Positions 6,365-64,000 of a stretch of DNA of 64,000 bases are shown one piece after another. The notes under the pieces were generated by a model, which worked only from the letters and a program-made list of their open reading frames with translations, did no database searches and was not told the DNA's origin. Both the position numbers and the translations under genes were made by a program. How positions within the stretch are numbered: position 1 is the first letter of the stretch; each line of letters starts with the position of its first letter. This DNA is from Macrostomum lignano (Eukaryota), in contig NIVC01001224.1 of assembly GCA_002269645.1 (NCBI GenBank), forward strand, positions 16,932 through 80,931. Direction: 5' to 3'.

Positions 6365-6431
6365 TGCGGTCAGCCTGTTGGCTGTCAGCAGTGAACCAGC
6401 ATTGTACTTTTAAAATTCAAACTCACCGATG

Positions 6432-37930: not shown

Positions 37931-40184
<2,254 letters not shown>

Positions 40185-46169: not shown

Positions 46170-47450
46170 ATTCAGCCTTGCGACACCCTCCACCTCAGCC
46201 TTGAGACACCCTCCACCTCAGCCTTGAGACACCCTCCACCTCAGCCTTGAGACACCCTCCACCTCAGCCTTGAGACACCCTCCACCTCAGCCTTGAGACA
46301 CCCTCCACCTCAGCCTTGAGGCACCCTCCACCTCAGCCTTGCGACACCCTCCACCTCAGCCTTGAGACACCCTCCACCTCAGCCTTGAGACACCCTCCAC
46401 CTCAGCCTTGAGACACCCTCCACCTCAGCCTTGAGACACCCTCCACCTCAGCCTTGAGGCACCCTCCACCTCAGCCTTGCGACACCCTCCACCTCAGCCT
46501 TGAGACACCCTCCACCTCAGCCTTGAGACACCCTCCACCTCAGCCTTGAGACACCCTCCACCTCAGCCTTGAGGCACCCTCCACCCCAGCCTTGCGACAA
46601 CCTCCACCTCAGCCTTGAGACACCCTCCACCTCAGCCTTGAGGCACCCTCCACCTCAGCCTTGCGACACCCTCCACCTCAGCCTTGAGACACCCTCCACC
46701 TCAGCCTTGAGACACCCTCCACCTCAGCCTTGAGAAACCCTCCACCTCAGCCTTGAGACACCCTCCACCTCAGCCTTGAGACACCCTCCACCTCAGCCTT
46801 GCGACACCCTCCACCTCAGCCTTGCGACACCCTCCACCTCAGCCTTGAGACACCCTCCACCTCAGCCTTGAGACACCCTCCACCTCAGCCTTGCGACACC
46901 CTCCACCTCAGCCTTGCGACACCCTCCACCTCAGCCTTGAGACACCCTCCACCTCAGCCTTGAGACACCCTCCACCTCAGCCTTGAGACACCCTCCAACT
47001 CAGCCTTAAGACACCCTCCACCTCAGCCTTGAGACACCCTCCACCTCAGCCTTGAGACATCCTCCACCTCAGCCTTGAGACATCCTCCACCTCAGCCTTG
47101 AGACACCCTCCACCTCAGCCTTGAGACATCCTCCACCTCAGCCTTGAGACATCCTCCACCTCAGCCTTGAGACATCCTCCACCTCAGCCTTGAGACACCC
47201 TCCACCTCAGCCTTGAGACATCCTCCACCTCAGCCTTGAGACATCCTCCACCTCAGCCTTGAGACATCCTCCACCTCAGCCTTGAGACACCCTCCACCTC
47301 AGCCTTGAGACATCCTCCACCTCAGCCTTGCGACACCCTCCACCTCAGCCTTGAGACACCCTCCAACTCAGCCTTAAGACACCCTCCACCTCAGCCTTGA
47401 GACACCCTCCAACTCAGCCTTGAGACATCCTCCACCTCAGCCTTGAGACG
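46170..47450. repeat. 23-bp tandem repeat, array 2 (~55 copies, same unit as 43790-44385)
   Basis: Unit caccctccacctcagccttgaga. Confidence 0.96.
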
Positions 47451-47466: not shown

Positions 47467-50400
47467 CTAGCACCCTCGGCCCTTCGTTTTATCAAGAGAC
47501 ACGACCCACCACCCCGATACCAAGCAGAACACCCGCCGCAACCTACCCATGCTGATGCTCTTAGTCGGATATCCGCCAGACGCGATGTTCTGATCCTCAG
47601 CAGATGAAGATTTCTCCCTGCTCACCCGGCAGACTTGCACCACTTTGCGCACATACAGACACAGCAGCACTGCCCCGGCGGCTACCAGGTTAGCAACGAA
47701 GATGGCCGGATCGCGCCACTTATAGCCGGTGAGGGTGGACACGCAGCCCCAGCACAGCTGAGCACCTGCGCAGAACAGCAGGCCGAGGGCCACCTGACGC
47801 GAGTCGGTCAAATCGGCGTCCCAGCTGAGCAGCGAGTACACCACGGCAGCCACCAGCAGGCCGGCCGGGTACAGGCAGCTGAGCGCCAGGCCTTCGTCGT
47901 AGAAACTCGACGGGCTGCAACGGCTCCAGGCGACGCCTTCGTAAGCGACCAGCTCGACGCTGTCCGGCCGCTGCAGGATCAGCCACTCGGTGCCGAGCAT
48001 GGCCGACACCAGGCAGATGCAGATGGACAGGCCCAGCAGGCTGACCGGGTGGCTCAGGCCGGTGAAGGATGGACCTTCGCCTGGGGAGCCGGCCGCCCTG
48101 TAGATGGTCCAGTTCACCACGCTGCGCACCAGCAGGCTGGCGTAGACGATGCAGTAGACCAGGGAGAGGCCGAACCGCCGGATGGTGCACACCACCGGGG
48201 TGGCGTGGGCGATGAACGCGATGTTGATGGCGAAGATGAGCAGGATGCCGACTAGGCATGCGAAGCCGAGATAGTTGGTGCCGGCCGTGCCCTGCACTTT
48301 GCGGGGAAACGCGTAGGCCAAGAAGCCGATGGCGACCAGGGTCACCAGGGCGCCAAGGGTGGTCAGCGCCAGCAGCACGGCGCCCCACGGGGTTCGAGCC
48401 CGGTCCCACACGTCCGGCTTGGGCAGCAGGGCCAGTGGGTCGCCTGAGTCGCCAGGACAGCCGCAGTCAACGCCGGTCGGACAGGCGGACGACGGAGTGG
48501 CGGCCAGCTCGCTGCCATCGGGACCGTAGGTGGCCAGGCTGAAGAGTGCGGTGAGGGCACCGATATGTAGCGATGCTGATAGTGTGTCTCAATAGGCTGA
48601 TAGTGTGTCTCAATATGCTGATAATGTGTCTCAATAGGCTGATAGTGTGTCTCAATATGCTGATAATGTGTCTCAATATGCTGATAATGTGTCTCAATAT
48701 GCTGATAATGTGTCTCAATATGCTGATAATGTGTCTCAATATGCTGATAATGTGTCTCAATATGCTGATAATGTGTCTCAATATGCTGATAATGTGTCTC
48801 AATATGCTGATGGTGTGTCTGAAAATGCTGATAGTATTGAATGGCAGGATTGTTCGCTGGGGTCGGAAAATTCAGGCTTCGTGAGGCGAGATTAGAATTC
48901 CGTCAGCCAATCAAAATCTAGATAGAGGGAGTGAGGTGGGTGAATGTACAGGGCAGGGAGGGGCATAATGTCGAAGTGACGTAATCACGGAATTCTAAAA
49001 ATAGAATCGTACTCACCTCTGGCCAGCTTGAGGCACGTATCTATTGCGCCAATAGCCAATTTTATTATAGACATATCCGGAGCCCGACCGGACAAAATTG
49101 AGCACATCGTAGCCCCGATCTCCGTAGCCATCTGTAGTGAACCGGAACAGCAGGCTGTCGTTGCCTAGCCGGCCCTGCAGCACCCGCCACTGCGCGTTGC
49201 TAATATAGCGGTAGATAGTTGCCAGGCGAGTGGCCGCCGGCATCCGGTACAGGCACACATCCGTTGCCGTCGTGCCGCATTCAGCCCGCTGGAAATCGGC
49301 GACACCTTTGGCGGCGATGAATGCGGACAGGATGGTGGAGTAGGTGCCGCCGTTCTGGGTCAGCGCGCCCGCTGGCAGGCTGCCGCTCGGGTCGCAGACG
49401 GTGGCGTACTGAGTCTGGATCACCGAGCTGCCCGTGAGACGGCACTTCAGCGTGTGCTGCCAGAATTCCTGTGGTGAGCGAGAGAGTTCAGTGTGGGCGT
49501 TAGGGTTAGGATTCTCCAAGATTGGCAGAGCCCATTCATGTATACTCGTGGCGATTGAGGAGAAAAAATTGCCATTTAATACTAGTTGGGATTTTGGCTC
49601 TCAATGAGCTCTGCCTCTCCCCTATCAGCCTCTCTTTTTCCTCCCTCCCTCTCCCCTATCTACCTCTCTCTTTCTCTCTCCCCTCTCTCTCTCTCCCGTC
49701 AGCCAATTAGAATCAAGATTGATGGAGTGAGGTGGGTGAATGTACAGGGCAGGGAGGAGCATAGCAGGGAGAGGCATAGCCCCTCTCTTTCTCTCTCCCT
49801 CTCTCCTCTCTTCCTCTCTCCTTCTCTCTCATCTTTTTCTTCTGTATCACCCTACACCTATCCCCTGTAAGTTCTCACTTCTACCGAGAGAGAGAGAGAG
49901 AGCGGTCTGGTAGAGACCCCACACGCTTGAAACCGGATGCCTTTGAAAATTTAATCTTTTTAAAAAAATGCAACTTTGACACATCGTGACCTCCTCCCTC
50001 ACCTCCAGCCAGTCCACCGGGATGCCCTTCCGTCTGGCCGGCGCCAGTCCGATCTCGGCCACCCAGCGGTCCAGATCGGGTACAGTGAAGTAGGTCTGGC
50101 GCAGGGTCACGGCTCCCAGTGCCGCCGACTCCAGTCCTTGCACCACGGACATCTTGTCCGCCCAGCTGTCCAAGCCGAGCAGTACAAATCGGCCCTGCAG
50201 GCCGAGCTCGCGCACCGCGGTCAGCAAGGTGCGCAGGTCCTGCTCGGGCAGGTAGGCGATCAGCGCGTTGACGTACGCCATCCGGCTTGCCGACTGCAGC
50301 GCCGCTTTGGCCTCGGCCAGGCTGATCGCCGATCCGGCAGCGCCGGCGCCGATGTACTTCATGCAAACCGACTGGCTGCCGTTGCGACGGGCGATCGCCG

Positions 50401-53400
50401 CTTCGAAGGCCGCCTTGCCGGCCAAGCCGAACGGGGTGGTGTCGTGGATGAGGGACACCACCGACCAGTTGTAGCTGCTGGCCACGTCTAGGAGGGCGTC
50501 GATCTGGCGGTTGGCATTGGGGATGTGGGTGAGCAGGTGGTTGAATGTGGGTGAGCAGGTGGTTGAATGTGGGTGAGCAGGTGGTTGGATGTGGGTGAGC
50601 AGGTTGTTAATGTGGGTGAGGAGGTTATAAATGTGGGTGAGCAGGTTGTTGGATGTGGGTGAGCTGGTTGTTAATGTGGGTGAGGAGGTTATAAATGTGG
50701 GTGAGCAGGTGGTTGGATGTGGATGAGCAGGTGGTAGATTTTGAGACAGAGGTTAATGAAAGTGCTTATGTAGACTACTTTATCGCTAATCTCGACTACT
50801 TCTAGTATAAGAATACGAATATTATGACCCGAAAAAATCGCTCCTTACCTGCACACTATCCGGCGGCACCACCCGCAGGAATCTCGGGTAAAATGCTCGA
50901 CTGCTCAATGAAATCGCGGTGGCATCCGGCGACACCACGGTGGAGTCTGGCACGACGGTTGCCAGTCTGGCGCTGACCGCCGAACCGTCGGTGAGATAAG
51001 CGACGGCGGTCAGCGGGCCGACAAGTTCGGTGAAGCCGGCGTAGCCGCAGATGCCGGTGCCGGACGTGTAGGAGAAGGCGAAGGTGGCCGCCCGAGCCTC
51101 CGACTGGCAGACATCGATGCTAAGGCCGCCGAATTTGAAGCCGGAGACGTCGGGGTCGCTGTTGTTGTTGATGAGGTCGATGGCGTAGTGGAAGGCCAGG
51201 AGGTTGTTGAAGCCGGACTGCAGGTTCATGGGGCCGCACAGGGATGCGGACCGGCTGCCGTGGACTGACAGGAACTGCACGAGGTTCAGGTCCATGCTGC
51301 TGGAGTTCACCTGCATGTACACGGAGCTGGCGGCGGGGTGAGGGTTGGTCTGAATAAGATGGGCGTGATTCAGATAGCGGTAGATATCCAGATTGACATC
51401 TGATGGCATAAGGTGTCTGCCGGTTTTTCAAGATGTCAGTTTGGCGGTGTATGATGTCAGTGGGGGTGTATGATGTCAGTGGGGGTGTATGATGTCAGTG
51501 GGGGTGTATGATGTCAGTGGGGGTGTATGATGTCAGTGGGGGTGTATGATGTCAGTGGGGGTGTATGATGTCAGTGGGGGTGTATGATGTCAGTGGGGGT
51601 GTATCATGTCAGTGGGGGTGTATGATGTCAGTGGGGGTGTATGATGTCAGTGGGGGTGTATGATGTCAGTGGGGGTGTATGATGTCAGTGGGGGTGTATG
51701 ATGTCAGTGGGGGTGTATGATGTCAGTGGGGGTGTATGATGTCAGTGGGGGTGTATGATGTCAGTGGGGGTGTATGATGTCAGTGGGGGTGTATCATGTC
51801 AGTGGGGGTGTATGATGTCAGTGGGGGTGTATGATGTCAGTGGGGGTGTATGATGTCATTAGGAGTTGTATGATGTCAGAGAGTGATGTAGGATGTCAGT
51901 GGGTGGTGTAGGATGTCAGTTGGTGGTGTATGATGTCAGTGGGTGGTGTATGATGTCAGTGGGGGTGTATGATGTCAGTGGGTGGTGTATGATGTCAGTG
52001 GGTGGTGTATGATGTCAGTGGTGATGTAGGATGTCAGTGGGTGGTGTAGGATGTCAGTTGGTGATGTAGGATGTCAGTGGGTGGTGTATGATGTCAGTGG
52101 GTGGTGTATGATGTCAGTGGTGATGTATGATGTCAGTGGTGATGTAGGGTGTCAGTGGGTGGTGTATGATGTCAGTGGTGATGTAGGATGTCAGTGGGTG
52201 GTGTATGATGTCAGTGGGTGGTCTATCCACATTCTTATAAATTCCCCATAGCAACCAATTAGACGGGAGTACTCACAGGTTGCGCCCCAGATTCGGGCAG
52301 ACGGTGTCGCAGGAGCCGGCCAGGCTGCAGTTGCTGGTCCAGGCCAGGCTGAAGTCGCTGCGCAGTTTTAGCAGTGCCGTATCGTTGTAGGCGCCGACGC
52401 TGGAATAGAAGAAGCCCGATGATGTGGTGCGCAGCTCGTAGATGTGGTAGCCCCGGTTGCTGTCGCCGGCCGCGTTGACGGTGAAGTTCAAATTGGTGGC
52501 GTCGACGAACACGGCCGACCGGATGCCGCTCTGCACCCACTGGCGCTTCTCGCCGGAGCCGTAGAAGTCGCTGCAGATGCCGTTGTAGTCCGGACCGCAG
52601 ATGCGCAGCAGAGCCGTGTGGATGCCCAGCGCGGTGGAGTAGACAGCGTTCACAACATAGAGGGCCAGTGAGTCCTGCGGGTGTCCACGGCGGGGCGGGG
52701 ATTCTTTTATTTCTTTTATTCGCAATTCCTTTCAATCAAAAAAGTTTACAGCTCTTTCAAAATGGCATCAGTTTCTTTCAATTTGTTTTCGGTAAATAAA
52801 AAAGTTGAAAATGAGCCGACAATTGGATGTTGTCGATATCATACCCAGTTTAACGTGTTAAAGATCAGACACAGAACTCCAAATTCTCCTAAGCTTTTGA
52901 AGACAAGATCATAAACTGTATGTTTTAAAAACTCTCTCTAGGACTGCCGTCTAGAGTAATGAACTGCAGTTCCGTGAAGTCTGTTAATTCAATCGCTCTT
53001 TAGACTTGGAGGAGGAAGATGACGTAATGTGAGGGCTGTCACTGACTATTAAACTTCAACTCACCTTGTGCCCTGCTTAACGCGCAAAATGTGCATCTCA
53101 CTTATGCATACATCATGTACTTTCTACCCAAACTTTTACCAATCGCTCAAATATCGTTTTATACCATTTAGTATTTAAATACTTGTATCTCTCTAAAACA
53201 AGTCTTAACGGTGTCGCGTCACCCTTTTCGAACAAACGTTCAATTGCAGATCCAGGAGAGGGTCACAAAAAGGTCAGCTGACCCCCTTGCCGGGAAAAAT
53301 CCTAGATCAGCCCGTACAAACTTTGAGATATTTATTGAAGCAACTTTGGGTTTGATATCAATATATGACACTAGAATGACAAAATGGGTCGTTGTGTTGA

Positions 53401-56400
53401 GCAGGGCTGAACACCTGCATGAAAGAGCCCTAGTTACAAGATTTTTACAGCATCTCATGTGCTCTTATGAAGCTGCCTTGGTTCTAGCGCTCACCTGTGA
53501 ATAGTTTCTAGAATCCGTGAGCGACATTGTAGACGAGCTGCATCTTTTACTGTAGTAGGGCGAACTGCTGGACAGGGTGCACTGGAACAGGTGCTCATAG
53601 TACTCATTGAACCAGGGATTCACTGAAGCGTAACTTGTTGGATTCTTTGACAGCAGGTAGCTTCGCTCGAAGTCAGTGAGGTCGGCGGTCTCGAAGCCGA
53701 ACGTGATGGCTCGAGGATAGCGGCCGTTGGTGATTTTGCTCAGCACAGTCTTGCTGTTGCCCCAGTAGGTCGTGCCTGGTTTGCGAGTGAGGTGGGGTTG
53801 GTAATGTTGGAGAGCTGGTGTAAGCTGGAGACTGAGATGAGCGACTGGGAGATGCTGCAGGCAATGTTTTTTTCTAGTGTATCTCCTTTGCAGACCAACA
53901 CTAATCCTGTTGCTTCCGGCACTACTAACTTCTTCCAGTACTATCGGTGCTTCCTGTACTACCAGGTGCTTCCGGCACTACTAACTTCTTCCAGTACTAT
54001 CGGTGCTTCCGGTACTACCAGCTGCTTCCGGTACTATCTTTGCCTCCGGTACTATCGTTGCTTCCGCTAACTACAGTTATTCCCTGTACTTGCAAGTTTT
54101 ACAACCACTTATTTTCGGCTAGTTTTACTTGCTTGAACTACTTGTAATAATGTTCTACTGTCTGTCTGACTGTCTCAATTCTTCTCACCCTGGCCTCAAC
54201 TAGGCAAGCACCTGAATGACCTTGTTGTCAACGAAGTTCGCTTACCAATAAACAGGAACCGATCGTATGTAAGATTATTTCGCGACACGGCGCCAAGAAG
54301 TTCAGCGAGGTCGTTAGACTGCAGGAAGGTGACAATCACAGTTGACTGGGGCCTCTTCAGCAGCTCGGAGGCCACTTGATCGGCGTTAACAGCGGTAAGA
54401 CCGGTGCGGTTCACCTGTGAGAGTCAATGGCAGGGCCCAGTTGAAACTTTTATTTAGATTTAATTGGCTTTTTCCTTGCTTGTACAGTGCTGAGATTTAA
54501 GCATTTAGTATATGGACTAGCATTCAATGACCCCCCTGTGGGGGCACCTTTTAAGCTCCCCGAGCTACATATGCACGTACAGTATACATGTACGAGACAC
54601 CCCTTGTCGTCTTGATCCCATCTCTGTTTGAGCAGAAAATCTACCTGTAGAGTGTGACTGATGCAGATGCCTTCGTTAGCGATGGCTCGCTGAACAGACT
54701 GCAATCCGCTAGATCCGTAGGCGCCGGGAGACAGCACGAATTGTACATTGGTGAGGCCGTAGCGCTTCAGGAAATCCACAATAGCGTAGGCCACCTTGTC
54801 GTCGCTGGGCACCGTGCGCGAGAAATACGGATAGAGCTGCTTGTTGCTAAGGGAGCTCATGGTGGCCGCGTAGGAGATCACGGGCACCTGCACCACGTTG
54901 GTTACCTGTAAAGGTGGGCAGGGGCGAGTTGAGTTGGTAAAGAAACCACGTCGTAAAACTTTTGTACCAACGTAGCCGGATGACCTATGCTCGATTCCTG
55001 GAGACTACTCATATGAGTGATTCCTGTGGCTGGCCTGTGAGAGCATCGAGTCTCGAAATAAAATTGAATGATTCACTTGATTACCTAATATACCGGTACA
55101 TATGAACACCGTTAAGGAGTCCCTAGTTCCTAGAAGCATAAAGTAGCTAGTGAATTTAGTATATGGACAAGTAATCTACGACCCCCTGGGAGGCAATTAA
55201 CAAAAGTCCAAAAATTGCTTAACTCGATACTCATACTTTCGGGCAATAGCCCGAAAAATCACACTCATACTACTCCAGGTACTTAGCATTTATCAGCTAA
55301 ACACCAATAGGCTGTCGGTTTAACAATTCCCCTATCACCGCCAAGCGTGGGATGAACAGGTAATTAACTAAGTAAAAACCCACCCTAGACAGTTGATCTG
55401 CCATCTCGGATGTGGAGGCAGCCACGTAAGCCATGACCTTTTCCGGGTCAATTCGGTTCAAGCTGGAGTCCCTGAGCACGATGGAGCCCGAGTGCAGATT
55501 GGCCACCAGGCTGTCCGTGCGCACAGCTGACGAGCAGGTGTCCATGACGATGCCGCCAACCTTAACGCCGCGAAGTTTTCCAGAGAATATCGGACTGGTT
55601 TGGATGGACTCGATGGCGTATTTGAAAACCTCCGTCAGAAGGAAGCCGTTCTGGCCGTTGACTCTGCCGCAGCTGAACGGCACAGAGCCGGAATAGTGCA
55701 CATCGAAGAGGCCTGCGGGTGAGGAGTGAAAGTATATCTTCTCTCTAACTTTATTTTTTCTTCATCCTCTCTCAAATAAGTCCTTTTTGTTCATTGATTT
55801 CTTAACCTACTGGGCGCCCACCTCACTCCGTTTCTATTTATTTTGCCCCCATTGGCTGTCAACAGCTTTCCTGCCCCACTGGGCACCCACCTCACTCCAT
55901 TTCTATTCACTTCACCCCATTGGCTGTCAGCGGGTTTCCTACGCCACTGGGCGCCCACCTCACTACATTTCTATTCGCTTCACCCTATTGGATGAAAGCC
56001 TAGCTTCCGATAGGAAGCACGAGATCTCTTTCAAACAGATTTCACACCCATTCAGTTTAGATAAAATGCATCACCTCGCACCTTCATTATTACGAGTAGA
56101 CTTTAGACAAATGCTTTCGCTAGCTAAATTACTCACCACCAATCAGCAGCTGGCCGGGCACATAGAGAAACTTCTCCGTCCTATCCAGCGATTTCGGACA
56201 GTTGGTGCAATCGGCACAGGCGGCTGGCACTGAGCTGTACACGGAGCTGCGGCTGGGGAACGCAGGCAGATCGCTGAGCACGCTGAACATGTACCTGCCT
56301 ACTGGAAGGTAGTCCGGGCCCACCCGGTTTAGCGCCAGCCAGCCCATGTTGCCATCGCGATTGGAACGGAATTCAAAACTGCTGCCGCCGAGAGCTAGGA

Positions 56401-59400
56401 ATTTGACAGCAGACAGCCTGTCTGCCAGCTGTCCGTTCAGTCCGGGGTTCAACCAGAAGTTCGGGCAGACGGCTAGGTGGGGTGCAGTGCGAGTGCAAGT
56501 GTAGCCAATTCATCGTAATTGTTGCTTTGCGCTGATCATTTTGAAACTTCGGAATTCAAACACCCCACCTCCCTGACTGATTCTCCATATAAACACCCCA
56601 CCTCCCTGACTGATTCTCCATATAAACACCCCACCTCACTGACTGATTCTCCATATAAACACCCCACCTCCCTGACTGATTCTCCATTTAAACACCCCAC
56701 CTCCCTGACTGATTCTCCATATAAACACCACCACCTCCCTGACTGATTCTCCATATAAACACCCCACCTCACTGACTGATTCTCCATATAAACACCCCAC
56801 CTCACTGACTGATTCTCCATATAAACACCCCACCTCACTGACTGATTCTCCATATAAACACCACCACCTCCCTGACTGATTATCCATTTAAACACCACCA
56901 CCTCACTGAATGATTCTCCATTTAAACACCACCACCTCCCTGACTGATTATCCATTTAAACACCACCACCTCACTGAATGATTCTCCATTTAAACACCAC
57001 CACCTCCCTGACTGATTCTCCATATAAACACCACCACCCCCCTGACTGATTCTCCATATAAACACCACCACCTCCCTGACTGATTATCCATTTAAACACC
57101 ACCACCTCACTGACTGATTTTCCATTTAAACACCCCACCTCACTGACTGATTCTCCATTTAAACACCCCACCTCACTGAATGATTCTCCATTTAAACACC
57201 TGCTACCGGCTCAAACAGTCGTCACAATCGGCCCGTATTCCGTGACTCACAGGTGTAGGAGCTGTTGCAACCAGCGACCAGCATATCCGCATAGGCTTTG
57301 GCAATGCTGAACAGCGCATTGGTGGTTGTCATCATGAACAATCCCGGATAGAACTGCGGCGAGGCAGCCATTGGCCAGCTGTTGTTGCAGCGGGAGCTGT
57401 AAGCCAAACTGCCCGTGGTGCTGCAGTTGAACAGCGCCTCGTAGTAGGGCACCAGCCACGGGTTGTCGATGCTGCTGTCAGCCGACAGGCCGCTCAGGTG
57501 GGCCGTCACTCCGGCAACGTCGGGCGAGTTCACCTGCATCACCCAGCTGTTGTTGGCGCCCGGCCCCAGGCCGCTCAGGGCGCTGTCGCGCGTCATTTCG
57601 CCCCAGTAGTTGCTGGCGATGAACACGAGGCCGTTGTTGTCGGCGGTCAGCTGGACGAGGTCGGCCGATTTGTCCGACAGCACCACCACTACTCGGGTCT
57701 TGGAGATGTCGACTGTGAAATGAAGCCGGTTGAAATTGAGATTTGAAGTATCGAAATACTAAGAAAAATGTCTGTGTACTGGGGCGCTGCTATTGTAACA
57801 TGCAACTCGCTGACAACTCTCACTCTGTCTTCCAACTGCAGCTCAGGGCTGCTGCCAACTAACCGCGACCGACTCTGCTTAACTCTGCTTCACTCACTCG
57901 GCTGGGTACCCTTTTGAAACCATTACTATGCTCGTTAATCGGCGCACTTTAATGCACTTTATTCACATTAACGTGATTCACAAGTCTTAAATAGAAAATT
58001 GATTTTGAGCCAAAAGCTGAGATTTTCACCAACTTGCTTCTCACGCATCAGTCAGTTTATACAAAATTTGAAATTAAATCCTCTGCAGTATAACTCACGG
58101 ATAATGTTCGACAGGATGGAGGCCACCGAACCGTCTGTGCCGACCTCAAGGCAGCGTGGCACGCAGATTCCCTCCCGCAGAGCCTGCACTCGGAACTCAG
58201 TAGCCAGCCGGTTTCCATAATCATTGTTAGAGTACACCAGCTGGACGCACTTCCAGTTGAACTTGTTGATGACGGCGATGATGGCAGACACCTGCGACAG
58301 GCTGGCTGGTACGGTGCGGAAGACGCCCAGGGCCGTCAGGCCGTCGGAGCTGGCCGACGGGCTGACCAGCGGAACGCCGCCGAGGTCACGCAGCACCGGA
58401 GCCAGCGCTGTCGTCACGGCGTCGCCGTAGCTGACCCAGCTCCGGATCTTTGACGCGTCGATGTTGGCACCAGTCGACCTGTCGGGTAGCAGCAGGGTGC
58501 CCTGAGAGATGGACGTCACCAGGCTGATGGCCACTGATGAGGAGCCGCAGACATCCAAGATGAGGGCGCCCAGCTTCACGGAACCGCCGAAGCGCACGTC
58601 TGACTTGTTCCCGCCGTTAATGTAGTCCAGCGTCCACCTAACGGCCTCGGTGTAGCCGAAGCCTTCACCAGTTTTGACCGGGCCGCAGGCACCGCCGGAG
58701 CTGCCAGGAGAACGAACGTTGACCAGAACACCGACAAGGATGTCGCCCGGTAGGTACAGGTAGTTTGGCGTGCCAGTGAAGTACGGCGCGCACTCGCTGC
58801 ACCGGGAAGTGTCGCCGCACGAAGAGGAAAGCGTGGCGACGCCGTGAGCGAGCTGCAGCAGGCCGGTGTCGAGGCTGAAGGCGGGCACCGTGGCTCCCAC
58901 GGCCTCGTAGGCGGCGCTGCCGTTTTTCACGTTGTACACAGCCAAGCCGAAGGTCGGCACGGAGCGATCAGCAAAGGTAAAAGTCGAACCAGTCGATGGG
59001 TCGGTGAACCTGCCGTCCCCAAGCTGAGCAATCAGGTCGGCCTGCAGCCCAGTTCCGGTGCCGTTTCCGGCCGGGGAGGCGAACCAGAACGCGGTGCAGA
59101 CGCCGCCGCTGCCGCCTGTGCAGACGCGGCTCAGGCGGGTTGAAGCGGCCAGCGCGTAGCTGGCCGACGCTCGCAGCACAGAGGAGGTGTAGGCGGACTC
59201 AGTGTACCTGGCCGAGGCTGTCAGGCTGTGCGAGGCGGCGCCAGAGCACAGAGTTGTGTAGCCGCGCATGCTGGCAGCGGACAGCGAGCAGCTGTTCAGG
59301 GACTCGTACCACTCCGAGTACCAGGGGTTCGCGGCTGTCTCGTTTGCCAGCTCGCGAGTCCGACCAGCCCAGGTCTGGTAAGGCGTAGCGGAGGCCGGGC

Positions 59401-62400
59401 GCGGCTCACCGACTGTGATGACGCCCTGCGATTGGCTGACGCTGGTGGCAGTCAGCGCCGATTGGCTGGAGCCCCAGGCGACACCGCCGACCAGCTGGAC
59501 TGGCGCCGTCACCTGCGGCAGCAGTTGGGCCGCGTCGCTAGCCGTCACCAAGGCGACAACTACGGCTGCCGAGGTGCGCGTTTTCACCTGGGCCATCACC
59601 TGGGCGTGGGTGCCGTTGACGCCGATCACGTAGGTGGCCGAGACGCAGATGCGCCGGGAGCGCGCACCGGCAATGAAGAGGCGCGCAATCTCCTGGTTGG
59701 CGGCGTCCGGTGAGCAGACCAGCTGGACGTAGTTGACGGACAGAGACGCCAGGGTGGACAGCAGAGCCTCGGCTTCGGCGGACGCGGAGGCCACAGTCTG
59801 GTAGAGATAGGGACTGGAGGTCAGAGCGGCTGGCCTGAAGGAGATCAGCGATCGCCGCTGGGCCGCCAGCAGCTGGGCGATGCCGTCGGTGCTGCTGGCG
59901 CTGCCGGAGCCGACCACGCCGATGATGCGGCTGGGATCGAGGCCGGCGATTCTCCGGGCGCCGCTCAGCAGGGAGTCGACGAGGTCCTGGCCCAGCACGG
60001 AGCTGCCGCAGTCGTCGATTGCCACGGCGCCAATGAGGTCGGTGGCGTTCACCAGGGAGTTGGCCTGGCTCACGGAGTACAGAAAGGCGTCCAGCTCGCT
60101 GCTGCCATCGAGGCTGACGGCGCCGCAGCTGCGCGGACTGGAGCCGGGCGAGTGCACGGAGAACACGCCCAGCAGGTAGAGCTGGCCGGGCACGTGGGCG
60201 AATTTGAAATCCGGCGCGGCGGCCAGGCAGCCGGAGCAGGGCGCCGCAGGGCAGGCAAACTGGGGCAGCGGGATCACGGCGTCCCTGCGCGATGGTGAGT
60301 CGATAATTCTTAGTGTTACTAATAGTAGTGGTGACTTTTCGATTAGCTAGCTGCATTAAAACCTTTGCATCGTTTACGGAGCAGTTGAATAGACAGGTAC
60401 AAGTAGACAGGTGGGTATAGAGGTAGACGACGGGAGGCATGTAGGTAGACACAGTAGATATATTGGTCGACAGGTAGGTAAACTGGTAGACAGGTAGGTA
60501 TATTGGTAGGCATGTAAGTATTACAGGTAGACAGGTAGGTATACTGGTAGACAGGTAGGTACACTGGTAGACAGGTAGGTATATTGGTAGGCATGTAAGT
60601 ATTACAGGTAGACAGGTAGGTATACTGGTAGACAGGTAGGTACACTGGTAGACAGGTAGGTATACTGGTAGACAGGTAGGTATACTGGTAGACAGGTAGG
60701 TAATATTGATAGACAAAGTAAGCATAAGGGTAGTCAGACAGGTATAGACAATTAGACAGTCCATATTCAATCTAAGTAATAAAATATAGCTGCCAGTGCC
60801 TGCAACGAATCGCTATGAGCCTCACCTGGCCGAGTTGTACACATTCACGCTGCCGGACCGCCATTCAGAGAAGGTACCAGCCAGACGAACCCCCACACGG
60901 ACGTAGGCAAAGGCTGTGCCGTTCTGCCGCAGGTTGTGCACAAAGTAGTTGGTCTCGTAGGGTTCGCCGGTGTCCGTGAGCCGCAGCTGCTTCACCCGCC
61001 GGTCTGGCTCGCTGCTCGCCGTCGAATATCTGCCGGGGGAATTCGATTTTCGTAAGACTGGACCGTTTGAGCATCTCAGTGTGAGACTAGACCATTTGAG
61101 AATCTCAGTGTGGGACTAGACCATTTGAGAATCTCACCGTGAGACTAGAATATTTGAGCATATCCCCATTGAGACTAGACCATTTGAGAATCTCACCGTG
61201 AGACTAGACCATTTGAGAATCTCATTGTGAGACTAGACCCTTTGAGCATCTCTCCATTGAGACTAGACCATTTGAGAATCTCATTGTGAGACTAGACCAT
61301 TTGAGAATCTCATTGTGAGACTTGACCGTTTGAGCATCTCACTATGAGACTAAACCATTTGAGCATCTCACCGTGAGACTAGACTAGACCATTTTAGGCA
61401 TCTCAGTGTGAGACTACATGTAGACCATTTGAGAATCTCCCCATTGAGATTAGACCATTTGCGAATCTCACTGTGAGACTAGAATATTTGAGCATCTCAT
61501 CGTGAGACTTACAGTAGACCATTTCAGCATCTAACAATGAGACTAGACCACTTGAGCATCTCAATGTGAGACTAGACCGTTTGAGCCTCTCAATGTGAGA
61601 CGAGACCATTAAAGCTACCTCAGAGAGCCATAGAGCCTCTCACCTGGCAATCCGCTCAGCGGCCGTATAGCTAAAATCGGTCGCAGCCACCGCCGCGCTC
61701 AGCTCAGCATAGGTGGCGCCGCGCAGAGCCGCGCAGACCCGCGAGCCCCGGCGCATTTTGTCTGCCAGAGTGAGCGCAGCGCCCTGGCGTAGGCGAAAGC
61801 GGCATCGATGGCCGGCTCGACCAAGCGGTTCTGTTGGTACTGGGCGGTGGCGGTGGCCATGTTGAAGGCCGGACAGGGGGGAGCTCCGGGATTGGCCAGG
61901 TTGGTGCCGCCGGACAGGGTGCAGTTGCGGGTCTGCATGAACCACTGCTGGAAGGCGGCGTTGCCACTACTGGCCACGTTGGACAGCTCGTTCAGGTAAA
62001 ACGTCTCAAAAGCGTCGTTCGTTCGGTAGCCGAGACTCACGGAGGTCAGGCCGCGGGCGTTCCTGACGCTGAGCAGGGCGGCCGGATTGCCGAACGAGTC
62101 GGACATGATCCACTGGAAGGCGCTGGACGCCGGGTCGTTGAACAGTGGCGCGAAGTCGGCCAATGAAACGACGGCCACCACGGCTCGAACGCCGGAGTCG
62201 CGCAGGCGGCCCAGAGCGGACGAGATTTCCGCTGCGCTTGGCGCAACGCTGATGGCTGACGCCTGGGCTACGCAGATGCCCAGGGAGGCGCTGAGGCTGA
62301 CCAGGGCAGACTGACCGGCGGTGCCGTACGCGTCCGTGGTGTACAGGATGCCGATGTGAGTCCAGTTGTACTGCTTGAGCACAGCCCCGATTGCCTGCAA

Positions 62401-63465
62401 AAGTGTTGGCAGTGGTCTTCGCATGGCAGTAATAGTTGTGACAAAGGGGGTTGTAGCCTAGTAAGGGGGTTGTGGCCTAGTTAGGGGGTCGTAGCCTAGT
62501 GGTTAGAGCGTCAGACTCACGACTTGAAGGTCGTGGGTTCGATTCCCGATCCAACTGGAACAATTTGTGTCCTTGAGAAAGACAACTAACTCTGCATTGC
62601 TTCAGTCCACCCAGCTGTAAAATGGGTGCCAGCATTAGCTGGGGTAATTGAGGGTGTGTGTGGCGACCCCCCAGTCCTTGGACTGAACAGCCGTACGCAG
62701 CCTTCAGATGCGCCGCGCAATAGCTGTGGCTGAGCTGTCGGTTGCACATGTGCCCAATAGGGCAGGTGTAATCAATTACGCTCGTATTATTATTACAACA
62801 ATAATTCCAGCCTATAAACTACTGGCACCCGATGCATCCTGTTGAATTTTAGAATATTGATGAAGTTCAAGCATCGCACCGTGAACTCACATCAAACTGG
62901 GCGGTGTCGCTCGGGATGGTTCGGAAGAAGTTCGGATAGGCCGAGCGGTCGCTCAGGCCGGGCCCGCTGGCCGAGTAGGAGACCAACGGGATGCCGAAGT
63001 CGTTGAGCAGCGGCGCGAGCGACACGGCCGAGTCGGTGGTAGCTGGGCCGATGACGCCGGGCACCAGGGTCTGGTTGGCTGAGCAGGAGGCTGCGGTGGA
63101 CACCAGCTCGGGAAGATGGAGTCCAGCAGTGAGTCCGTCACCTGGCGCCTGCCGCAGGTGTCGTGAACGCTCAGCACTGCGGATGCAGGTGTTCATTTGA
63201 GAAATTATTCTCAAAAGCCCATTTTTAATGTTTCTCAATCCGCTGACTCAACCTTGCTACTCAAAGCTCATGCACTTTTACAGACCACTGACTCAACCCT
63301 GCTACTCAAAGCTCATGCACTTTGAGACGCCGTGAAGCCACAATTACTCACCGAACTTCACTCCGGGAATGTAGCTGTCATTTATTGCCAAGCCGGCTTC
63401 CGTTCCAGAATCCTTATTTAACAGATCGAACGCCCATTCCAACGCTTTGATGCTTGGCCAGGCGT
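47467..63465 (-). CDS. Giant class C GPCR (mGluR/CaSR-like) with at least five tandem Venus-flytrap modules plus 7TM; N-terminus outside the window; two 1-nt frameshifts
   Basis: Minus-strand exons, 5' to 3': 63465-63352, 63176-62891, 62394-61644, 61029-60826, 60284-58099, 57712-57251, 56472-56137, 55712-55384, 54905-54645, 54414-54246, 53775-53495, 52674-52277, 51326-50849, 50503-50003, 49468-49017, 48538-47547. The last exon either continues to the TAG at 47467 or splices at the donor after 47547 to an unlocated exon. All junctions are GT/AG and phase-consistent once one base is restored at 63110-63112 and at 61738-61740. In-window length ~2730 aa. Confidence 0.88.
47625..48390 (-). other. 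Class C 7TM domain
   Basis: PW before TM1; seven hydrophobic segments; TM3 VCTIRRFGLSL..YASLLVRS; TM4 EWL; ECL2 Cys (RCS); TM6 start TDSRQV; TM7 end LYVRKV. Confidence 0.85.
48575..48832. repeat. 21-bp intronic tandem repeat
   Basis: Unit gtgtctcaatatgctgataat. Confidence 0.93.
49030..51326 (-). other. Venus-flytrap module 5 (membrane-proximal)
   Basis: LCGPM, LAFHYAIDLINN, GFKFGGLSIDVC, VVSPDATAISLSSRAFYPRFLRVVPPD, YNWSVVSLIH, LGLDSWA, WLEEFWQHTLKC, FTTDGYGDRGYDVLNF, YNKIGYW. Confidence 0.85.
50522..50735. repeat. 22-bp intronic tandem repeat
   Basis: Unit gtgggtgagcaggtggttgaat, abutting the acceptor at 50504. Confidence 0.9.
51430..52222. repeat. 19-bp intronic tandem repeat, ~40 copies
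   Basis: Unit gtatgatgtcagtgggggt. Confidence 0.95.
52370..56165 (-). other. Venus-flytrap module 4
   Basis: PGQLLIGGLFDVH..CG, EVFKYAIESI, GVKVGGIVMDTC, PVISYAATMSSLSNKQLYPYFSRTVPSD, GAYG, GICIS, NPWFNEYYEHLFQC, VVNAVYSTALGIH, YSSVG. Confidence 0.88.
56290..58760 (-). other. Venus-flytrap module 3
   Basis: PGDILVGVLVNV..CGPV, EAVRWTLDYIN, KLGALILDVC, PLVSPSASS, FRTVP, FNWKCVQLVYSNNDYG, GICV, NPWLVPYYEALFNC, YLPVG. Confidence 0.85.
56556..57200. repeat. 33-bp intronic tandem repeat
   Basis: Unit aaacaccccacctccctgactgattctccatat. Confidence 0.93.
58850..60195 (-). other. Venus-flytrap module 2 (most degenerate)
   Basis: PGQLYLLGVFSVH..CG, DAFLYSVSQAN, GAVAIDDCGS, IIGVVGS, YLYQTV, ICVS, NPWYSEWYESLNSC, YEAVG. 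Confidence 0.8.
60390..60712. repeat. ~20-bp intronic tandem repeat
   Basis: Unit ggtagacaggtaggtatact. Confidence 0.88.
61065..61610. repeat. ~29-bp degenerate intronic tandem repeat
   Basis: Unit tgagactagaccatttgagaatctcattg. Confidence 0.88.
62483..62800 (+). mobile_element. tRNA-derived CORE-like SINE, copy 3 (apparently full length, antisense in a GPCR intron)
   Basis: gggggtcgtagcctagtggttagagcgtcagactcacgacttgaaggtcgtgggttcgattccc head, CORE-like body, 3' hairpin and (att)n tail. Confidence 0.87.
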
Positions 63466-63717: not shown

Positions 63718-64000
63718 TTTGGCGCTGGCGCCAATCCGGTGCTGGCGCCGTATTGGTGCTAGCGCCGCTTTAGTGTTAGCGCCATATTCGTGCTGGCGCC
63801 GCTTTAGTGTTAGCGCCGTATTCGTGCTGGCGCCGCTTTGGTGCTGGCGCCGCTTTGGTGCTGGCGCCGTATTGGTGCTGGCGCTGCTTTAGTGTTAGCG
63901 CCGTATTCGTGCTGGCGCCGCTTTGGTGCTGGCGCCGCTTTGGTGCTGACGCCGTATTGGTGCTGGCGCTGCTTAGTGTTAGCGCCGTATTCGTGCTGCC
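63718..64000. repeat. 17-bp GC-rich tandem repeat running off the window
   Basis: Unit gtgctggcgccgctttg / gtgctggcgccgtattg. Confidence 0.92.

What the first reader, a model, noticed from the sequence alone, without database searches (positions are those of the whole stretch)
47467..63465. Giant class C GPCR with at least five tandem Venus-flytrap domains on one 7TM
Seen: 16 phase-consistent minus-strand exons (~2730 aa) repeat the Venus-flytrap motif series five times (PG.l.lgglf.vH, eAf.yAi..IN, G..i.DtC, pliSy.at, F.RtvP, nW..v.....YG, giCi, NPW..e..e..f.C, Y..vG; the first motif of module 1 lies outside the window) before a single class C 7TM. Known: canonical class C receptors (mGluR, CaSR, T1R, GABA-B, V2R) carry one flytrap per chain and signal by dimer rearrangement of that domain. 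Inference: this is a multi-sensor receptor with a long ectodomain. It could integrate several ligands, form intramolecular flytrap pseudo-dimers, or act partly as an adhesion or mechanical rod. More modules may lie upstream, because module 1 is cut by the window edge. I do not know of a functionally characterised receptor with this architecture.
Basis: partly seen in the sequence, partly recalled or inferred. Interest (0 to 1): 0.93.

Follow-up and report, generated by a model that had tools for sequence, protein, structure and literature searches.

The report
Five-flytrap class C receptor gene
A flatworm gene really does encode a giant G-protein-coupled receptor with five glutamate-receptor-like 'Venus flytrap' sensor domains in a row, and this design is conserved in many invertebrate phyla, yet I found no published description of it.

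Summary
Sixteen GT-AG exons on the minus strand (63465-47467) encode 2759 aa. They comprise five complete Venus-flytrap (VFT) modules, each passing Pfam ANF_receptor on its own (E 6e-15 to 2e-42), followed by one 7tm_3 domain (E 2e-24). The window is Macrostomum lignano: the model is identical to two truncated UniProt models. One of these supplies a signal peptide about 50 aa before module 1, so there are exactly five modules, not more. Two 1-nt frameshifts in module 1 sit in homopolymer runs and are probably assembly errors.

The architecture is not unique. A profile search found 5xVFT+7TM proteins of 2730-2872 aa in a nemertean, bivalves and gastropods. Versions with 2-4 VFTs occur in octopus (truncated models), brachiopod, chelicerates, crayfish, a hemichordate, a crinoid and amphioxus. 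All the 3-5-VFT models looked up are labelled 'uncharacterized' or 'hypothetical', or auto-named mGluR3-like (octopus). Two uninterrupted contigs of about 9-10 kb, apparently transcripts, encode the whole protein.

Modules are orthologous position by position. Every VFT is followed by a C-x(n)-C-x2-C linker instead of the nine-cysteine domain. None keeps the glutamate-selecting residues. Only V1 and V5 keep the mGluR dimer-loop cysteine.

Seven literature searches found no description. I rate it a real, conserved, unstudied variant of class C GPCRs whose mechanism is only inferred.

The parts
63352..63465 (-). Exon 1 in the window (module 1, motif eAf.yAi..iN). It starts in phase 1, so an earlier exon lies beyond 64000.
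   Evidence: Acceptor cacag|AC and donor TCG|GTGAGT. Identical to P0001/P0151.
62891..63176 (-). Exon 2 (module 1: DTC motif, GVIG, SYSAS, FFRTIPSD). Contains frameshift 1.
63105..63106 (-). Frameshift site 1: one base is missing in TTCCC^GAGCTG relative to the annotated proteins (..SIFPELVSTAAS..).
61644..62394 (-). Exon 3 (module 1, lobe 2 and return to lobe 1). Contains frameshift 2.
61745..61746 (-). Frameshift site 2: GGG in the window where the annotated proteins imply GGGG (..CAGARGVCAAL..).
60826..61029 (-). Exon 4 (C-terminal strands of module 1).
58099..60284 (-). Exon 5. One 2186-nt exon holding linker 1 (CPAAPCSGC), all of module 2, linker 2 (CGDTSRCSEC) and the first ~230 aa of module 3.
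   Evidence: Continuous ORF. Pfam gives two ANF stretches.
57251..57712 (-). Exon 6 (module 3).
56137..56472 (-). Exon 7. Holds the end of module 3, linker 3 (CADCTNC) and the start of module 4 (FLYVPGQLLIG) in one exon.
55384..55712 (-). Exon 8 (module 4).
54645..54905 (-). Exon 9 (module 4).
54246..54414 (-). Exon 10 (module 4).
53495..53775 (-). Exon 11 (module 4).
52277..52674 (-). Exon 12 (end of module 4 plus linker 4, CSLAGSCDTVC).
50849..51326 (-). Exon 13 (module 5).
   Evidence: The acceptor is supported by the orthologue motif RYMQ / VYMQ.
50003..50503 (-). Exon 14 (module 5).
49017..49468 (-). Exon 15 (module 5). The junction DWLE|EFWQHTLKC matches the orthologue consensus DWFEEFWQ..HKC.
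47467..48538 (-). Exon 16: stalk, linker 5 (CPTGVDCGC), 7TM domain, short tail and stop codon (47469-47467).
   Evidence: Pfam 7tm_3, E 1.9e-24. AF2 predicts seven helices.
60254..63463 (-). VFT module 1 (aa 1-462 of the window model; its first ~76 aa lie outside the window).
   Evidence: ANF_receptor E 8.6e-37. mGluR6 VFT E 6e-30.
58820..60226 (-). VFT module 2 (aa 472-940), intronless, with the most degenerate binding pocket.
   Evidence: ANF_receptor E 5.6e-15. mGluR2 E 2e-15. Pocket columns.
56219..58789 (-). VFT module 3 (aa 951-1419).
   Evidence: ANF_receptor E 2.7e-20.
52330..56197 (-). VFT module 4 (aa 1427-1908), the most conserved and most mGluR-like module.
   Evidence: ANF_receptor E 2e-42. 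mGluR3 VFT E 1.2e-54. Conservation.
48484..52296 (-). VFT module 5 (aa 1920-2421), membrane-proximal.
   Evidence: ANF_receptor E 3e-22. mGluR5 E 9e-34.
47623..48390 (-). Seven transmembrane helices: TM1 48390-48310, TM2 48282-48211, TM3 48198-48091, TM4 48048-47974, ECL2 hairpin 47964-47914, TM5 47901-47827, TM6 47805-47731, TM7 47724-47623.
   Evidence: AF2 secondary structure mapped to the genome. mGluR2 7TM E 1.3e-11.
47545..47547 (-). Possible alternative donor G|GTAGGT. If it is used, the last 26 codons of the model are not coding and the tail continues downstream.
   Evidence: Read from the sequence. Not tested.

Best explanation
SHOWN. This is one real protein-coding gene of the flatworm Macrostomum lignano. 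It encodes a class C (glutamate-family) GPCR of about 2835 aa. The order of parts is: signal peptide (outside the window), five tandem Venus-flytrap modules V1-V5 of about 470-510 aa, each followed by a three-cysteine linker C-x(2-8)-C-x2-C, then one mGluR-like 7TM domain and a short tail. It belongs to an old orthologue family. The five-module form is shared by flatworm, nemertean and molluscs with one-to-one module orthology. Forms with 2-4 modules occur in arthropods, a hemichordate, an echinoderm and amphioxus.

INFERRED. It most likely works as a dimeric class C receptor. The membrane-proximal V5 would be the transducing flytrap. It keeps the dimer-loop cysteine, the lobe-2 cysteine that in mGluRs bonds the cysteine-rich domain, and the alpha-amino-acid core residues. 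V1 keeps the same features and would form a second, distal ligand-binding and dimerising head. V2-V4 lack the dimer cysteine and would act as spacer, auxiliary or allosteric sensors. V4 is the most conserved module. The ligands are probably amino acids or similar small molecules but not glutamate, because no module keeps the residues that bind glutamate's distal carboxylate. In the nemertean all five pockets, and in one bivalve four of the five, keep the amino-acid core. Multi-site sensing was therefore probably the ancestral state, with degeneration in particular lineages (V2 and V3 in M. lignano).
For: Gene structure:
- 16 GT-AG exons give one frame.
- The V2>V3 and V3>V4 junctions lie inside single exons.

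Domains:
- Five independent ANF_receptor hits and one full-length 7tm_3 hit.
- All best PDB matches are mGluRs: V4 1.2e-54, V5 9e-34, V1 6e-30, V2 2e-15, 7TM 1.3e-11.
- An AF2 model of V5+7TM (pLDDT 78.6) matches full-length mGluR chains at E about 1e-39 over about 835 columns.

Identity and N-terminus:
- The model is 100% identical to M. lignano A0A1I8I1E6 and A0A1I8IKL0 outside the two frameshift sites and two stretches (about 25 and 12 aa) where one or the other annotated model departs locally.
- A0A1I8I1E6 begins with a signal peptide.

Family:
- A profile search of 1.84e9 representatives lists ten 5xVFT+7TM architectures and seven 4xVFT+7TM architectures among the top 150, one of them this gene's own truncated model.
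- Pfam confirms 5 ANF + a C-terminal 7tm_3 in Tubulanus and Physella, and 4-5 ANF + 7tm_3 in Saccoglossus, Anneissia, Centruroides and Lingula.
- End-to-end collinear alignments show 27-32% identity.
- An NJ tree of 63 modules gives position-specific clades.

Transcripts:
- Logan contigs of 9030 nt and 10192 nt carry uninterrupted ORFs of 2802 and 2730 aa.

Mechanism clues:
- The dimer-loop Cys is present in V1 in 11 of 14 proteins and in V5 in 6 of 6, and absent from all V2-V4 modules (0 of 37).
- The lobe-2 Cys is present in 59 of 63 modules, and the glutamate-selecting R/R/K triad is absent from every module.
- The three-Cys linker follows nearly every VFT.
- The TM3 and ECL2 cysteines and the RRF motif are invariant.
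Against: No transcript, expression or protein data exist for M. lignano itself. The two UniProt models are truncated before V5. The window copy carries two frameshifts in V1, so this particular copy could be a pseudogene. AF2 does not predict ordered linkers: pLDDT is below 50 at 491-505 of V4-V5 and at 523-533 of V5-7TM. The two-module pTM is only 0.54, so there is no structural support for a rigid relay or for a linker-to-lobe-2 disulfide. The V5-to-TM1 stalk varies from about 25 to about 90 aa among orthologues, which argues against tight mechanical coupling. Pocket residues were read from a MAFFT alignment of about 25%-identical modules and may be misassigned. In arthropod forms the last VFT lacks the dimer cysteine. 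The M. lignano 7TM has substitutions at class C micro-switch positions (K3.50 to R, E6.35 to D, P of PKxY to Y), read by eye.
Confidence: 0.8

Rival explanations
1. This genomic copy is a decaying pseudogene. The two frameshifts in module 1 are real, so the locus makes no full-length receptor, although intact homeologues or alleles may exist elsewhere in the M. lignano genome.
For: Two frame breaks in exons 2 and 3 give premature stops if read literally.
Against: Both breaks are single-base contractions of C or G homopolymers, the typical long-read consensus error. Two independent annotated proteins read through both sites. One of those models carries its own local frameshifted stretch, so indel errors seem common in these assemblies. 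The remaining ~2300 codons have no stop or shift, and the sequence is otherwise identical to the annotated proteins.
Confidence: 0.12
2. The five flytraps are a gene-prediction illusion. On this reading the locus is a tandem array of separate class C genes or gene fragments that only look continuous.
For: Such fusions do exist. The Polypterus 'CASR protein, partial' models carry 9-10 ANF domains, NCD3G, and a 7tm_3 in the middle.
Against: The 16 kb holds only one 7TM. Two inter-module junctions lie inside single exons with no stop. The same five-module order and length recur in more than 8 species. Two uninterrupted contigs of 9-10 kb encode the whole chain. Module trees are position-specific.
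Confidence: 0.02
3. The ectodomain is mainly structural: an adhesion or mechanosensing rod tens of nanometres long (my estimate). Most flytraps would no longer bind small ligands, and the 7TM would report tension or contact rather than chemistry.
For: M. lignano V2 and V3 keep only 1-2 of the 5 amino-acid core residues. AF2 suggests independently folded beads with flexible linkers. A recent paper reports ligand-independent mechanical activation of GABA-B (PMC12595035, abstract seen).
Against: Tubulanus keeps the amino-acid core in all five modules and Sinanodonta in four of five. M. lignano keeps it in V1, V4 and V5. V4 is as conserved as the 7TM. Both patterns fit retained ligand pockets better than passive spacers.
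Confidence: 0.15
4. Flytraps pair within one chain: the chain folds back so that V1 and V5, or neighbouring modules, form mGluR-like pseudo-dimers. One polypeptide would then carry its own 'dimeric' sensor.
For: Exactly two modules per spiralian chain (V1 and V5) carry the cysteine that makes the inter-protomer disulfide in mGluRs.
Against: The V4-V5 model gives no confident packing (pTM 0.54). Arthropod 4-VFT forms keep the V1 cysteine but lack one in the last module. Known class C G-protein activation uses two 7TM domains (established knowledge).
Confidence: 0.1

Closest known systems
Metabotropic glutamate receptors (mGluR2/3, mGluR4/6/7/8, mGluR1/5)
   Same: Every module and the 7TM find mGluRs as best solved relatives. 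Both share the VFT fold, the lobe-2 'giCi' cysteine, the dimer-loop cysteine (V1 and V5 only), the TM3-ECL2 cysteines, and the overall protomer fold.
   Different: This protein has five VFTs instead of one. It has no NCD3G nine-cysteine domain, only a C-x(n)-C-x2-C linker after each VFT. The glutamate-selecting residues (equivalents of mGluR3 R64, R68, K389) are absent from all modules.
Predicted 5xVFT+7TM proteins: Tubulanus polymorphus XP_074641006.1, Sinanodonta woodiana KAL3856574.1, Argopecten irradians XP_069135753.1, Physella acuta XP_059178375.1, Babylonia areolata XP_076434694.1, Bulinus truncatus KAH9515187.1
   Same: They share the architecture, similar length (2772-2872 aa), the linkers and the module order. 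They are collinear at 27-32% identity (Bulinus about 26%, in two blocks). These are orthologues.
   Different: They are only computational models labelled 'uncharacterized' or 'hypothetical'. The stalk before TM1 is 40-70 aa longer in molluscs. Pocket residues differ by lineage.
Forms with 2-4 VFTs: Saccoglossus XP_002735016.2, Anneissia XP_033109263.1, Centruroides XP_067137488.1, Ornithodoros XP_064461074.1, Procambarus XP_069175470.1, Branchiostoma XP_035691717.1 (3 VFT) and XP_035696128.1 'mGluR3-like' (2 VFT)
   Same: Tandem VFTs with three-cysteine linkers on one 7tm_3. Arthropod V1 groups with spiralian V1, and the arthropod last module groups with spiralian V5.
   Different: They have fewer modules. 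Orthology of the internal modules to V2-V4 is unresolved in a crude NJ tree.
GABA-B receptor subunits
   Same: Class C receptors whose VFT joins the 7TM through a short stalk without a nine-cysteine domain (PMC12716839).
   Different: No GABA-B chain appears among the 7TM or VFT hits at E <= 1e-3. GABA-B has one VFT per chain and no three-cysteine linker.
BvgS-type bacterial sensor kinases
   Same: The only described signalling receptors I found with tandem VFTs in one chain. They are dimeric, with a mobile distal VFT1 and a closed proximal VFT2 that set the state of the transmembrane output (PMC4352136). This is a useful working analogy.
   Different: They have two bacterial periplasmic-binding-protein VFTs and a histidine-kinase output. 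They are not homologous in the output domain, so this is analogy rather than membership.

Membership tests
Class C (glutamate-family) GPCR | 7tm_3 heptahelical domain | tested here: met
   PF00003 E 1.9e-24 over profile 4-247 of 251. AF2 predicts seven helices plus an ECL2 hairpin.
Class C (glutamate-family) GPCR | Extracellular Venus-flytrap (ANF_receptor) ligand-binding domain | tested here: met
   Five independent PF01094 hits above the gathering score.
Class C (glutamate-family) GPCR | Conserved TM3-ECL2 cysteine pair | tested here: met
   C612 (PVVCTIRRF) and C702 (WSRCSP) are invariant in 16 family members.
Class C (glutamate-family) GPCR | Overall protomer fold like solved class C receptors | tested here: met
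   Foldseek: full-length mGlu2/3/5/8 chains at E about 1e-39 with about 835 aligned columns. TM-score is 0.44-0.49 because the domain orientation differs.
Class C (glutamate-family) GPCR | Constitutive dimer; G-protein coupling | not testable with these tools
   Only indirect evidence: a dimer-loop Cys in V1 and V5.
mGluR / CaSR / T1R / V2R group | Nine-cysteine NCD3G domain between VFT and 7TM | tested here: not met
   No PF07562 hit in any segment. A C-x(2-8)-C-x2-C linker stands in its place.
mGluR / CaSR / T1R / V2R group | One VFT per chain | tested here: not met
   Five VFTs per chain.
Glutamate-binding mGluRs | Residues that bind glutamate's distal carboxylate (mGluR3 R64, R68, K389) | tested here: not met
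   No multi-VFT module carries the triad, while most single-VFT mGluR-like controls do.
Amino-acid-binding VFTs (8-residue motif of class C) | Core S/T, T, D, Y, D that hold the alpha-amino-acid moiety | tested here: inconclusive
   M. lignano scores V1 5/5, V5 5/5 (Y to F), V4 4/5, V3 2/5 and V2 1/5. Tubulanus scores 5/5 in all modules. Assignment depends on the alignment.
Conserved 5xVFT+7TM orthologue group (spiralians) | Collinear full-length similarity and position-specific module orthology | tested here: met
   One HSP spans q3-2717 against s71-2755 of the Tubulanus protein (31.8% id), and similarly for six others. V1-V5 form clades in the NJ tree.
Conserved 5xVFT+7TM orthologue group (spiralians) | Three-cysteine linker after each VFT, including before TM1 | tested here: met
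   CPAAPCSGC, CGDTSRCSEC, CADCTNC, CSLAGSCDTVC and CPTGVDCGC. The same pattern occurs in all nine spiralian proteins.
Conserved 5xVFT+7TM orthologue group (spiralians) | Expressed as a single mRNA | tested here: met
   Met for two unnamed orthologues: contigs L001 (9030 nt) and L002 (10192 nt) carry uninterrupted ORFs, which I take to be transcripts because they are intronless. Not tested for M. lignano.
BvgS-like tandem-VFT sensor kinases | Histidine-kinase output; bacterial PBP-type VFTs | tested here: not met
   The output is 7tm_3 and the VFTs are ANF_receptor type. Analogy only.

The most novel reading that the evidence does not exclude
This is an ancient bilaterian class C receptor type, lost from vertebrates, insects and C. 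elegans. Two chains would form a long dimeric stalk latched by disulfides at both ends (V1:V1' and V5:V5'). Up to five amino-acid-type pockets per chain would be read out together. The closure state of distal flytraps would pass through serial VFT-linker units to a single 7TM pair. That activation mode is not covered by the current one-VFT-dimer model of class C signalling.
Probability: 0.3. Interest if true: 0.85.

Novelty: new variant of a known kind. Interest (0 to 1): 0.7.

Why it matters
Class C GPCR activation is understood as the rearrangement of one flytrap dimer passed through a cysteine-rich domain to a 7TM dimer. This conserved family stacks two to five flytraps in one chain and replaces the cysteine-rich domain with a three-cysteine linker, so it challenges how general that model is.

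The family appears to predate the split of protostomes and deuterostomes. It has apparently stayed unstudied because the standard model animals do not appear among its members found here. It offers natural material for testing how serial flytraps communicate. It also offers candidate chemosensory or nutrient receptors in molluscs, flatworms, ticks and crustaceans, and a eukaryotic counterpart to bacterial BvgS.

For annotation, it separates genuine multi-VFT genes from fused tandem arrays. Genuine genes have a single C-terminal 7TM, no NCD3G domain and position-specific modules. It also shows that the two M. lignano UniProt models are truncated halves of one gene.

Tried and rejected
1. The search for homologous proteins returned nothing with either the 741-aa ORF or V5+7TM. 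Identical M. lignano proteins are in that collection, so the word filter probably saturates. I used the exhaustive profile search instead.

The four-module profile was accepted.

3. I considered tiny introns to explain the two frame breaks. The only GT..AG pairs near the breaks (13 nt and 51 nt at the exon 2 site; none at the exon 3 site) are too short or do not restore the frame, so I rejected this.

4. No NCD3G domain was found.

5. Seven full-text literature searches on multiple or tandem VFT or ANF domains in class C GPCRs found nothing relevant. Checks of the amphioxus, flatworm and choanoflagellate GPCR repertoire papers also found nothing. The only related result was bacterial BvgS.

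6. AF2 of V4-V5 was meant to test inter-module packing and linker order. The result was uninformative or negative: pTM 0.54 and linker pLDDT below 50.

7. The N-terminal 76 aa of A0A1I8I1E6 are not encoded anywhere in the window.

8. ARAGORN found no tRNA in the SINE-like repeats.

Full report
**1. What is in the sequence**

The region is eukaryotic. On the minus strand, 16 stop-free segments lie between 63490 and 47470. Enumerating GT donors and AG acceptors that keep the frame gives one best chain of exons, mostly with GTGAGT donors. The exons are 63465-63352, 63176-62891, 62394-61644, 61029-60826, 60284-58099, 57712-57251, 56472-56137, 55712-55384, 54905-54645, 54414-54246, 53775-53495, 52674-52277, 51326-50849, 50503-50003, 49468-49017 and 48538-47470, with the stop at 47469-47467.

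The spliced product is 2759 aa. Literal translation breaks twice, both times in module 1. In exon 2 the frame shifts between ..DSIFP and LVSTAAS... In exon 3 it shifts between ..QTKCAG and VCAALRG... No plausible intron repairs either break. Inserting one base at each site restores a single ANF_receptor match of 127 bits across module 1.

**2. Domain content**

I cut the product at the short cysteine motifs between modules. Each of the five units then passes Pfam ANF_receptor independently: E 8.6e-37, 5.6e-15, 2.7e-20, 2e-42 and 3e-22. The C-terminal exon matches 7tm_3 almost end to end (E 1.9e-24). No NCD3G domain is detected.

The modules are 23-29% identical to each other, so the duplications are old. 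Module 2 used as a query finds no further copy elsewhere in the 64 kb.

Against solved structures, every part finds mGluRs first:
- V4, 1.2e-54 (mGluR3)
- V5, 9e-34 (mGluR5)
- V1, 6e-30 (mGluR6)
- V2, 2e-15 (mGluR2)
- 7TM, 1.3e-11 (mGluR2)

CaSR and T1R appear only as far weaker VFT hits and not at all for the 7TM. No GABA-B chain is listed for the VFTs or found for the 7TM.

An AlphaFold2 model of V5+7TM, built with 16 family sequences, has mean pLDDT 78.6. It shows a Rossmann-like alternating beta/alpha flytrap, seven long helices and an ECL2 hairpin. Foldseek aligns about 835 of its 851 residues to full-length mGlu2/3/5/8 chains at E about 1e-39.

**3. One chain, not several genes**

- Exon 5 is a single 2186-nt exon. 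It carries the V1/V2 linker, all of V2, the V2/V3 linker and the first part of V3.
- Exon 7 carries the end of V3, the linker and the start of V4.
- Exon 12 carries the end of V4 and its linker.
- Exon 16 carries the last linker and the 7TM.
- There is only one 7TM.

**4. Source organism and gene ends**

The exhaustive profile search returned as best hit a Macrostomum lignano protein, UniRef A0A1I8I1E6 (1866 aa), with cluster mate A0A1I8IKL0 (1919 aa). My model is 100% identical to both, apart from the two frameshift sites and one local defect in each annotated model. The window is therefore M. lignano (Platyhelminthes). Those independent predictions also corroborate my splice junctions for exons 1-12.

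Both proteins read through the two frameshift sites (..SIFPELVSTAAS....CAGARGVCAAL..). The window therefore has CCC for CCCC and GGG for GGGG. Homopolymer contractions are typical assembly errors. One annotated protein has its own out-of-frame stretch elsewhere.

A0A1I8I1E6 starts MAVSWLSVSLSLVLLAVFRPASAA. About 50 residues later it continues into the window's first exon. Those 76 residues are not encoded in the window. V1 is therefore the first module, the receptor has exactly five flytraps, and its length is about 2835 aa. Both UniProt models stop inside or just after V4, so they are truncated models of this gene.

At the 3' end a good donor (G|GTAGGT after 47547) could remove the last 26 codons. 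A 23-nt minisatellite begins 18 nt after the stop.

**5. The architecture is conserved**

The profile search found 9754 proteins at E <= 1e-3. The top of the list is filled with proteins of 2730-2872 aa that have five matched stretches. A local domain census of the 150 listed representatives found ten with V-V-V-V-V-7TM and seven with V-V-V-V-7TM, plus V3+7TM and V2+7TM forms.

Names and sources:
- Five VFTs: Tubulanus polymorphus (nemertean), Sinanodonta and Argopecten (bivalves), Physella, Babylonia and Bulinus (gastropods).
- Multi-VFT, but incomplete gene models (five or more VFT stretches): Octopus, Lingula (brachiopod).
- Three or four VFTs: Centruroides (scorpion), Ornithodoros (tick), Dinothrombium (mite), Procambarus (crayfish), Saccoglossus (hemichordate), Anneissia (crinoid).
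- A messier, doubtful model: Romanomermis (nematode).
- Three and two VFTs: Branchiostoma.

All the proteins with three to five VFTs that I looked up are labelled 'uncharacterized' or 'hypothetical', carry only automatic domain-based names, or (octopus) are auto-named 'metabotropic glutamate receptor 3-like'. The 2-VFT amphioxus proteins are also labelled 'metabotropic glutamate receptor 3-like'.

Pfam confirms 5 ANF + a C-terminal 7tm_3 in Tubulanus and Physella. It confirms 4-5 ANF + 7tm_3 in Saccoglossus, Anneissia, Centruroides and Lingula.

By contrast, the Polypterus 'CASR protein, partial' entries have 9-10 ANF domains, NCD3G, and a 7tm_3 in the middle. They are fused tandem-array models.

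The window protein aligns end to end and collinearly with the five-module proteins. Identity is 31.8% over 2787 columns with Tubulanus and 27-30% with six others.

An NJ tree of 63 modules gives clean position-specific clades for V1, V2, V3, V4 and V5 across spiralians. Arthropod V1 joins spiralian V1, and the arthropod last module joins spiralian V5. The five-module state therefore predates the flatworm-nemertean-mollusc divergence. A multi-module state probably predates the protostome-deuterostome split, although the tree is crude.

**6. Transcript evidence**

Two unnamed family members sit on Logan contigs of 9030 nt (SRR25726911; ORF 118-8526, 2802 aa) and 10192 nt (SRR32835171; ORF 306-8498, 2730 aa). 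Neither ORF is interrupted. I interpret these as assembled transcripts because an intronless gene of this kind is unlikely. If so, a single mRNA of more than 8 kb encoding five flytraps and the 7TM exists in at least two species. No such data were reachable for M. lignano.

**7. Clues to mechanism (inference from alignments)**

(a) Linkers. Every VFT, including the last one before TM1, is followed by C-x(2-8)-C-x2-C. This holds in nine spiralian proteins, the deuterostome forms and most arthropod junctions. The repeated unit is therefore VFT plus a three-cysteine linker.

(b) Lobe-2 cysteine. The cysteine of the 'giCi' motif is present in 59 of 63 modules. From established mGluR literature, cited from memory, this is the mGluR2 C234 equivalent, which bonds the cysteine-rich domain. 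Together with the three linker cysteines it makes four cysteines per unit, enough for one intra-linker bond and one VFT-to-linker bond. This pairing is hypothetical. AF2 gives the linkers pLDDT below 50.

(c) Dimer-loop cysteine. In the loop that carries the inter-protomer disulfide cysteine of mGluRs (again cited from memory), a cysteine is present in V1 of 11 of 14 multi-VFT proteins and in V5 of all six spiralians scored. It is absent from all 37 V2, V3 and V4 modules of the multi-VFT proteins. All four single-VFT mGluR-like controls have it.

(d) Binding pockets. No module has the basic residues that hold glutamate's distal carboxylate. The alpha-amino-acid core (S/T, T, D, Y, D) is complete in M. 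lignano V1 and V5, 4/5 in V4, 2/5 in V3 and 1/5 in V2. Tubulanus keeps it in all five modules and Sinanodonta in four of the five.

(e) Conservation. V4 is the most conserved flytrap, at 38% mean pairwise identity. The others are at 28-31% and the 7TM is at 39.7%.

(f) Flexibility. The V4-V5 model folds both flytraps confidently (pLDDT 80.8) but has pTM 0.54. This fits flexible or unresolved inter-module geometry. The stalk to TM1 varies from about 25 to about 90 aa among orthologues.

**8. Most likely function**

I propose a dimeric class C receptor for amino acids or similar small molecules, not glutamate. V5 would act as the canonical transducing flytrap. V1 would form a second ligand-binding and dimerising head. 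V2-V4 would be auxiliary sensors or spacers whose pockets have decayed to different extents in different lineages.

The closest described working analogy for serial flytraps is bacterial BvgS. There a mobile distal VFT1 and a closed proximal VFT2 in an intertwined dimer set the output state (PMC4352136).

The rivals are scored separately: a pseudogene copy, mainly mechanical or adhesive use, and intrachain V1-V5 pairing. The fused-gene artefact is effectively excluded.

**9. Novelty**

Seven full-text searches, plus inspection of GPCR-repertoire papers for amphioxus, flatworms and the relatives of animals, found no description of class C receptors with more than one flytrap. Recent reviews of the family list only ANF+NCD3G, ANF alone and Cache+EGF ectodomains.

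The proteins themselves have been in public databases for years as uncharacterised predictions. The gene is therefore not new as a sequence. What I found no description of is the family and its architecture. The library searched omits most subscription journals, so an earlier mention cannot be excluded.

**10. Verdict**

I rate it a new variant of a known kind, with interest 0.7.

Noticed in passing
Not in the window; proteins P0039, P0044 (Lingula XP_013382567.1, XP_013389729.2) and more than 30 other representatives: A separate family with a signal peptide, two ANF_receptor flytraps, a single hydrophobic helix at about aa 1000-1060 and an unannotated cytoplasmic tail. It has no 7tm_3 domain. 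It looks like a double-VFT single-pass receptor family, and I did not find it described.
   Followed up: partly
Not in the window; Polypterus senegalus KAG2462797.1, KAG2462629.1, KAG2463186.1, KAG2462795.1, KAG2462627.1: The 'CASR protein, partial' models of 2249-3927 aa carry 5-10 ANF stretches. The one scanned with Pfam also has NCD3G and a 7tm_3 in the middle. They are probably fused tandem-array gene models, not true multi-VFT receptors.
   Followed up: partly
window 63105-63106 and 61745-61746: Two single-base homopolymer contractions (CCC for CCCC, GGG for GGGG) relative to annotated M. lignano proteins. One of those annotated proteins has its own out-of-frame stretch at window aa ~221-245. 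Indel errors seem frequent in assemblies of this genome.
   Followed up: yes
window 46172-47449 and 44000-44384: A 23-nt minisatellite (TCAGCCTTGAGACACCCTCCACC, 55.6 copies) begins 18 nt after the receptor's stop codon. The same unit recurs 1.8 kb further on.
   Followed up: no
window 48573-48833, 50521-50732, 51432-52218, 56554-57200, 60403-60744, 61055-61610, 63719-63998: Six of the 15 introns (3, 4, 6, 12, 13, 15) and the sequence upstream of exon 1 hold a different minisatellite each, with units of 17-117 nt.
   Followed up: no
window 62480-62818 (intron 2) and 45026-45222: A dispersed repeat whose translation ends ..ESNPRPSSRESDALTTRLRPPN, resembling a tRNA-derived SINE tail. ARAGORN calls no tRNA there.
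   Followed up: partly
window 47545-47547: A consensus donor (G|GTAGGT) lies inside the last exon. The final 26 codons (RLRRVFCLVSGWWVVSLDKTKGRGC) look non-coding, so the true C-terminal tail may lie in an exon beyond the minisatellite.
   Followed up: no
window 50-490(+), 6023-6361(+), 18825-21227(+), 37895-38401(+): Open frames that, read by eye without a Pfam check, resemble other genes: a protein-kinase fragment, a CAP/SCP-domain exon, a FYVE zinc-finger protein with a long low-complexity N-terminus, and an N-myristoylated neuronal-calcium-sensor-like EF-hand protein.
   Followed up: no
UniProt A0A1I8I1E6 and A0A1I8IKL0 (P0001, P0151): Both public M. lignano models of this gene are truncated. 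They end at the exon 11 and exon 12 boundaries and lack V5 and the 7TM. They should be merged and extended.
   Followed up: yes
Family alignment (nine spiralian orthologues): V4, not the membrane-proximal V5, is the most conserved flytrap: 38% mean pairwise identity against 28% for V5. It is also the most mGluR-like (E 1.2e-54). No explanation so far.
   Followed up: partly
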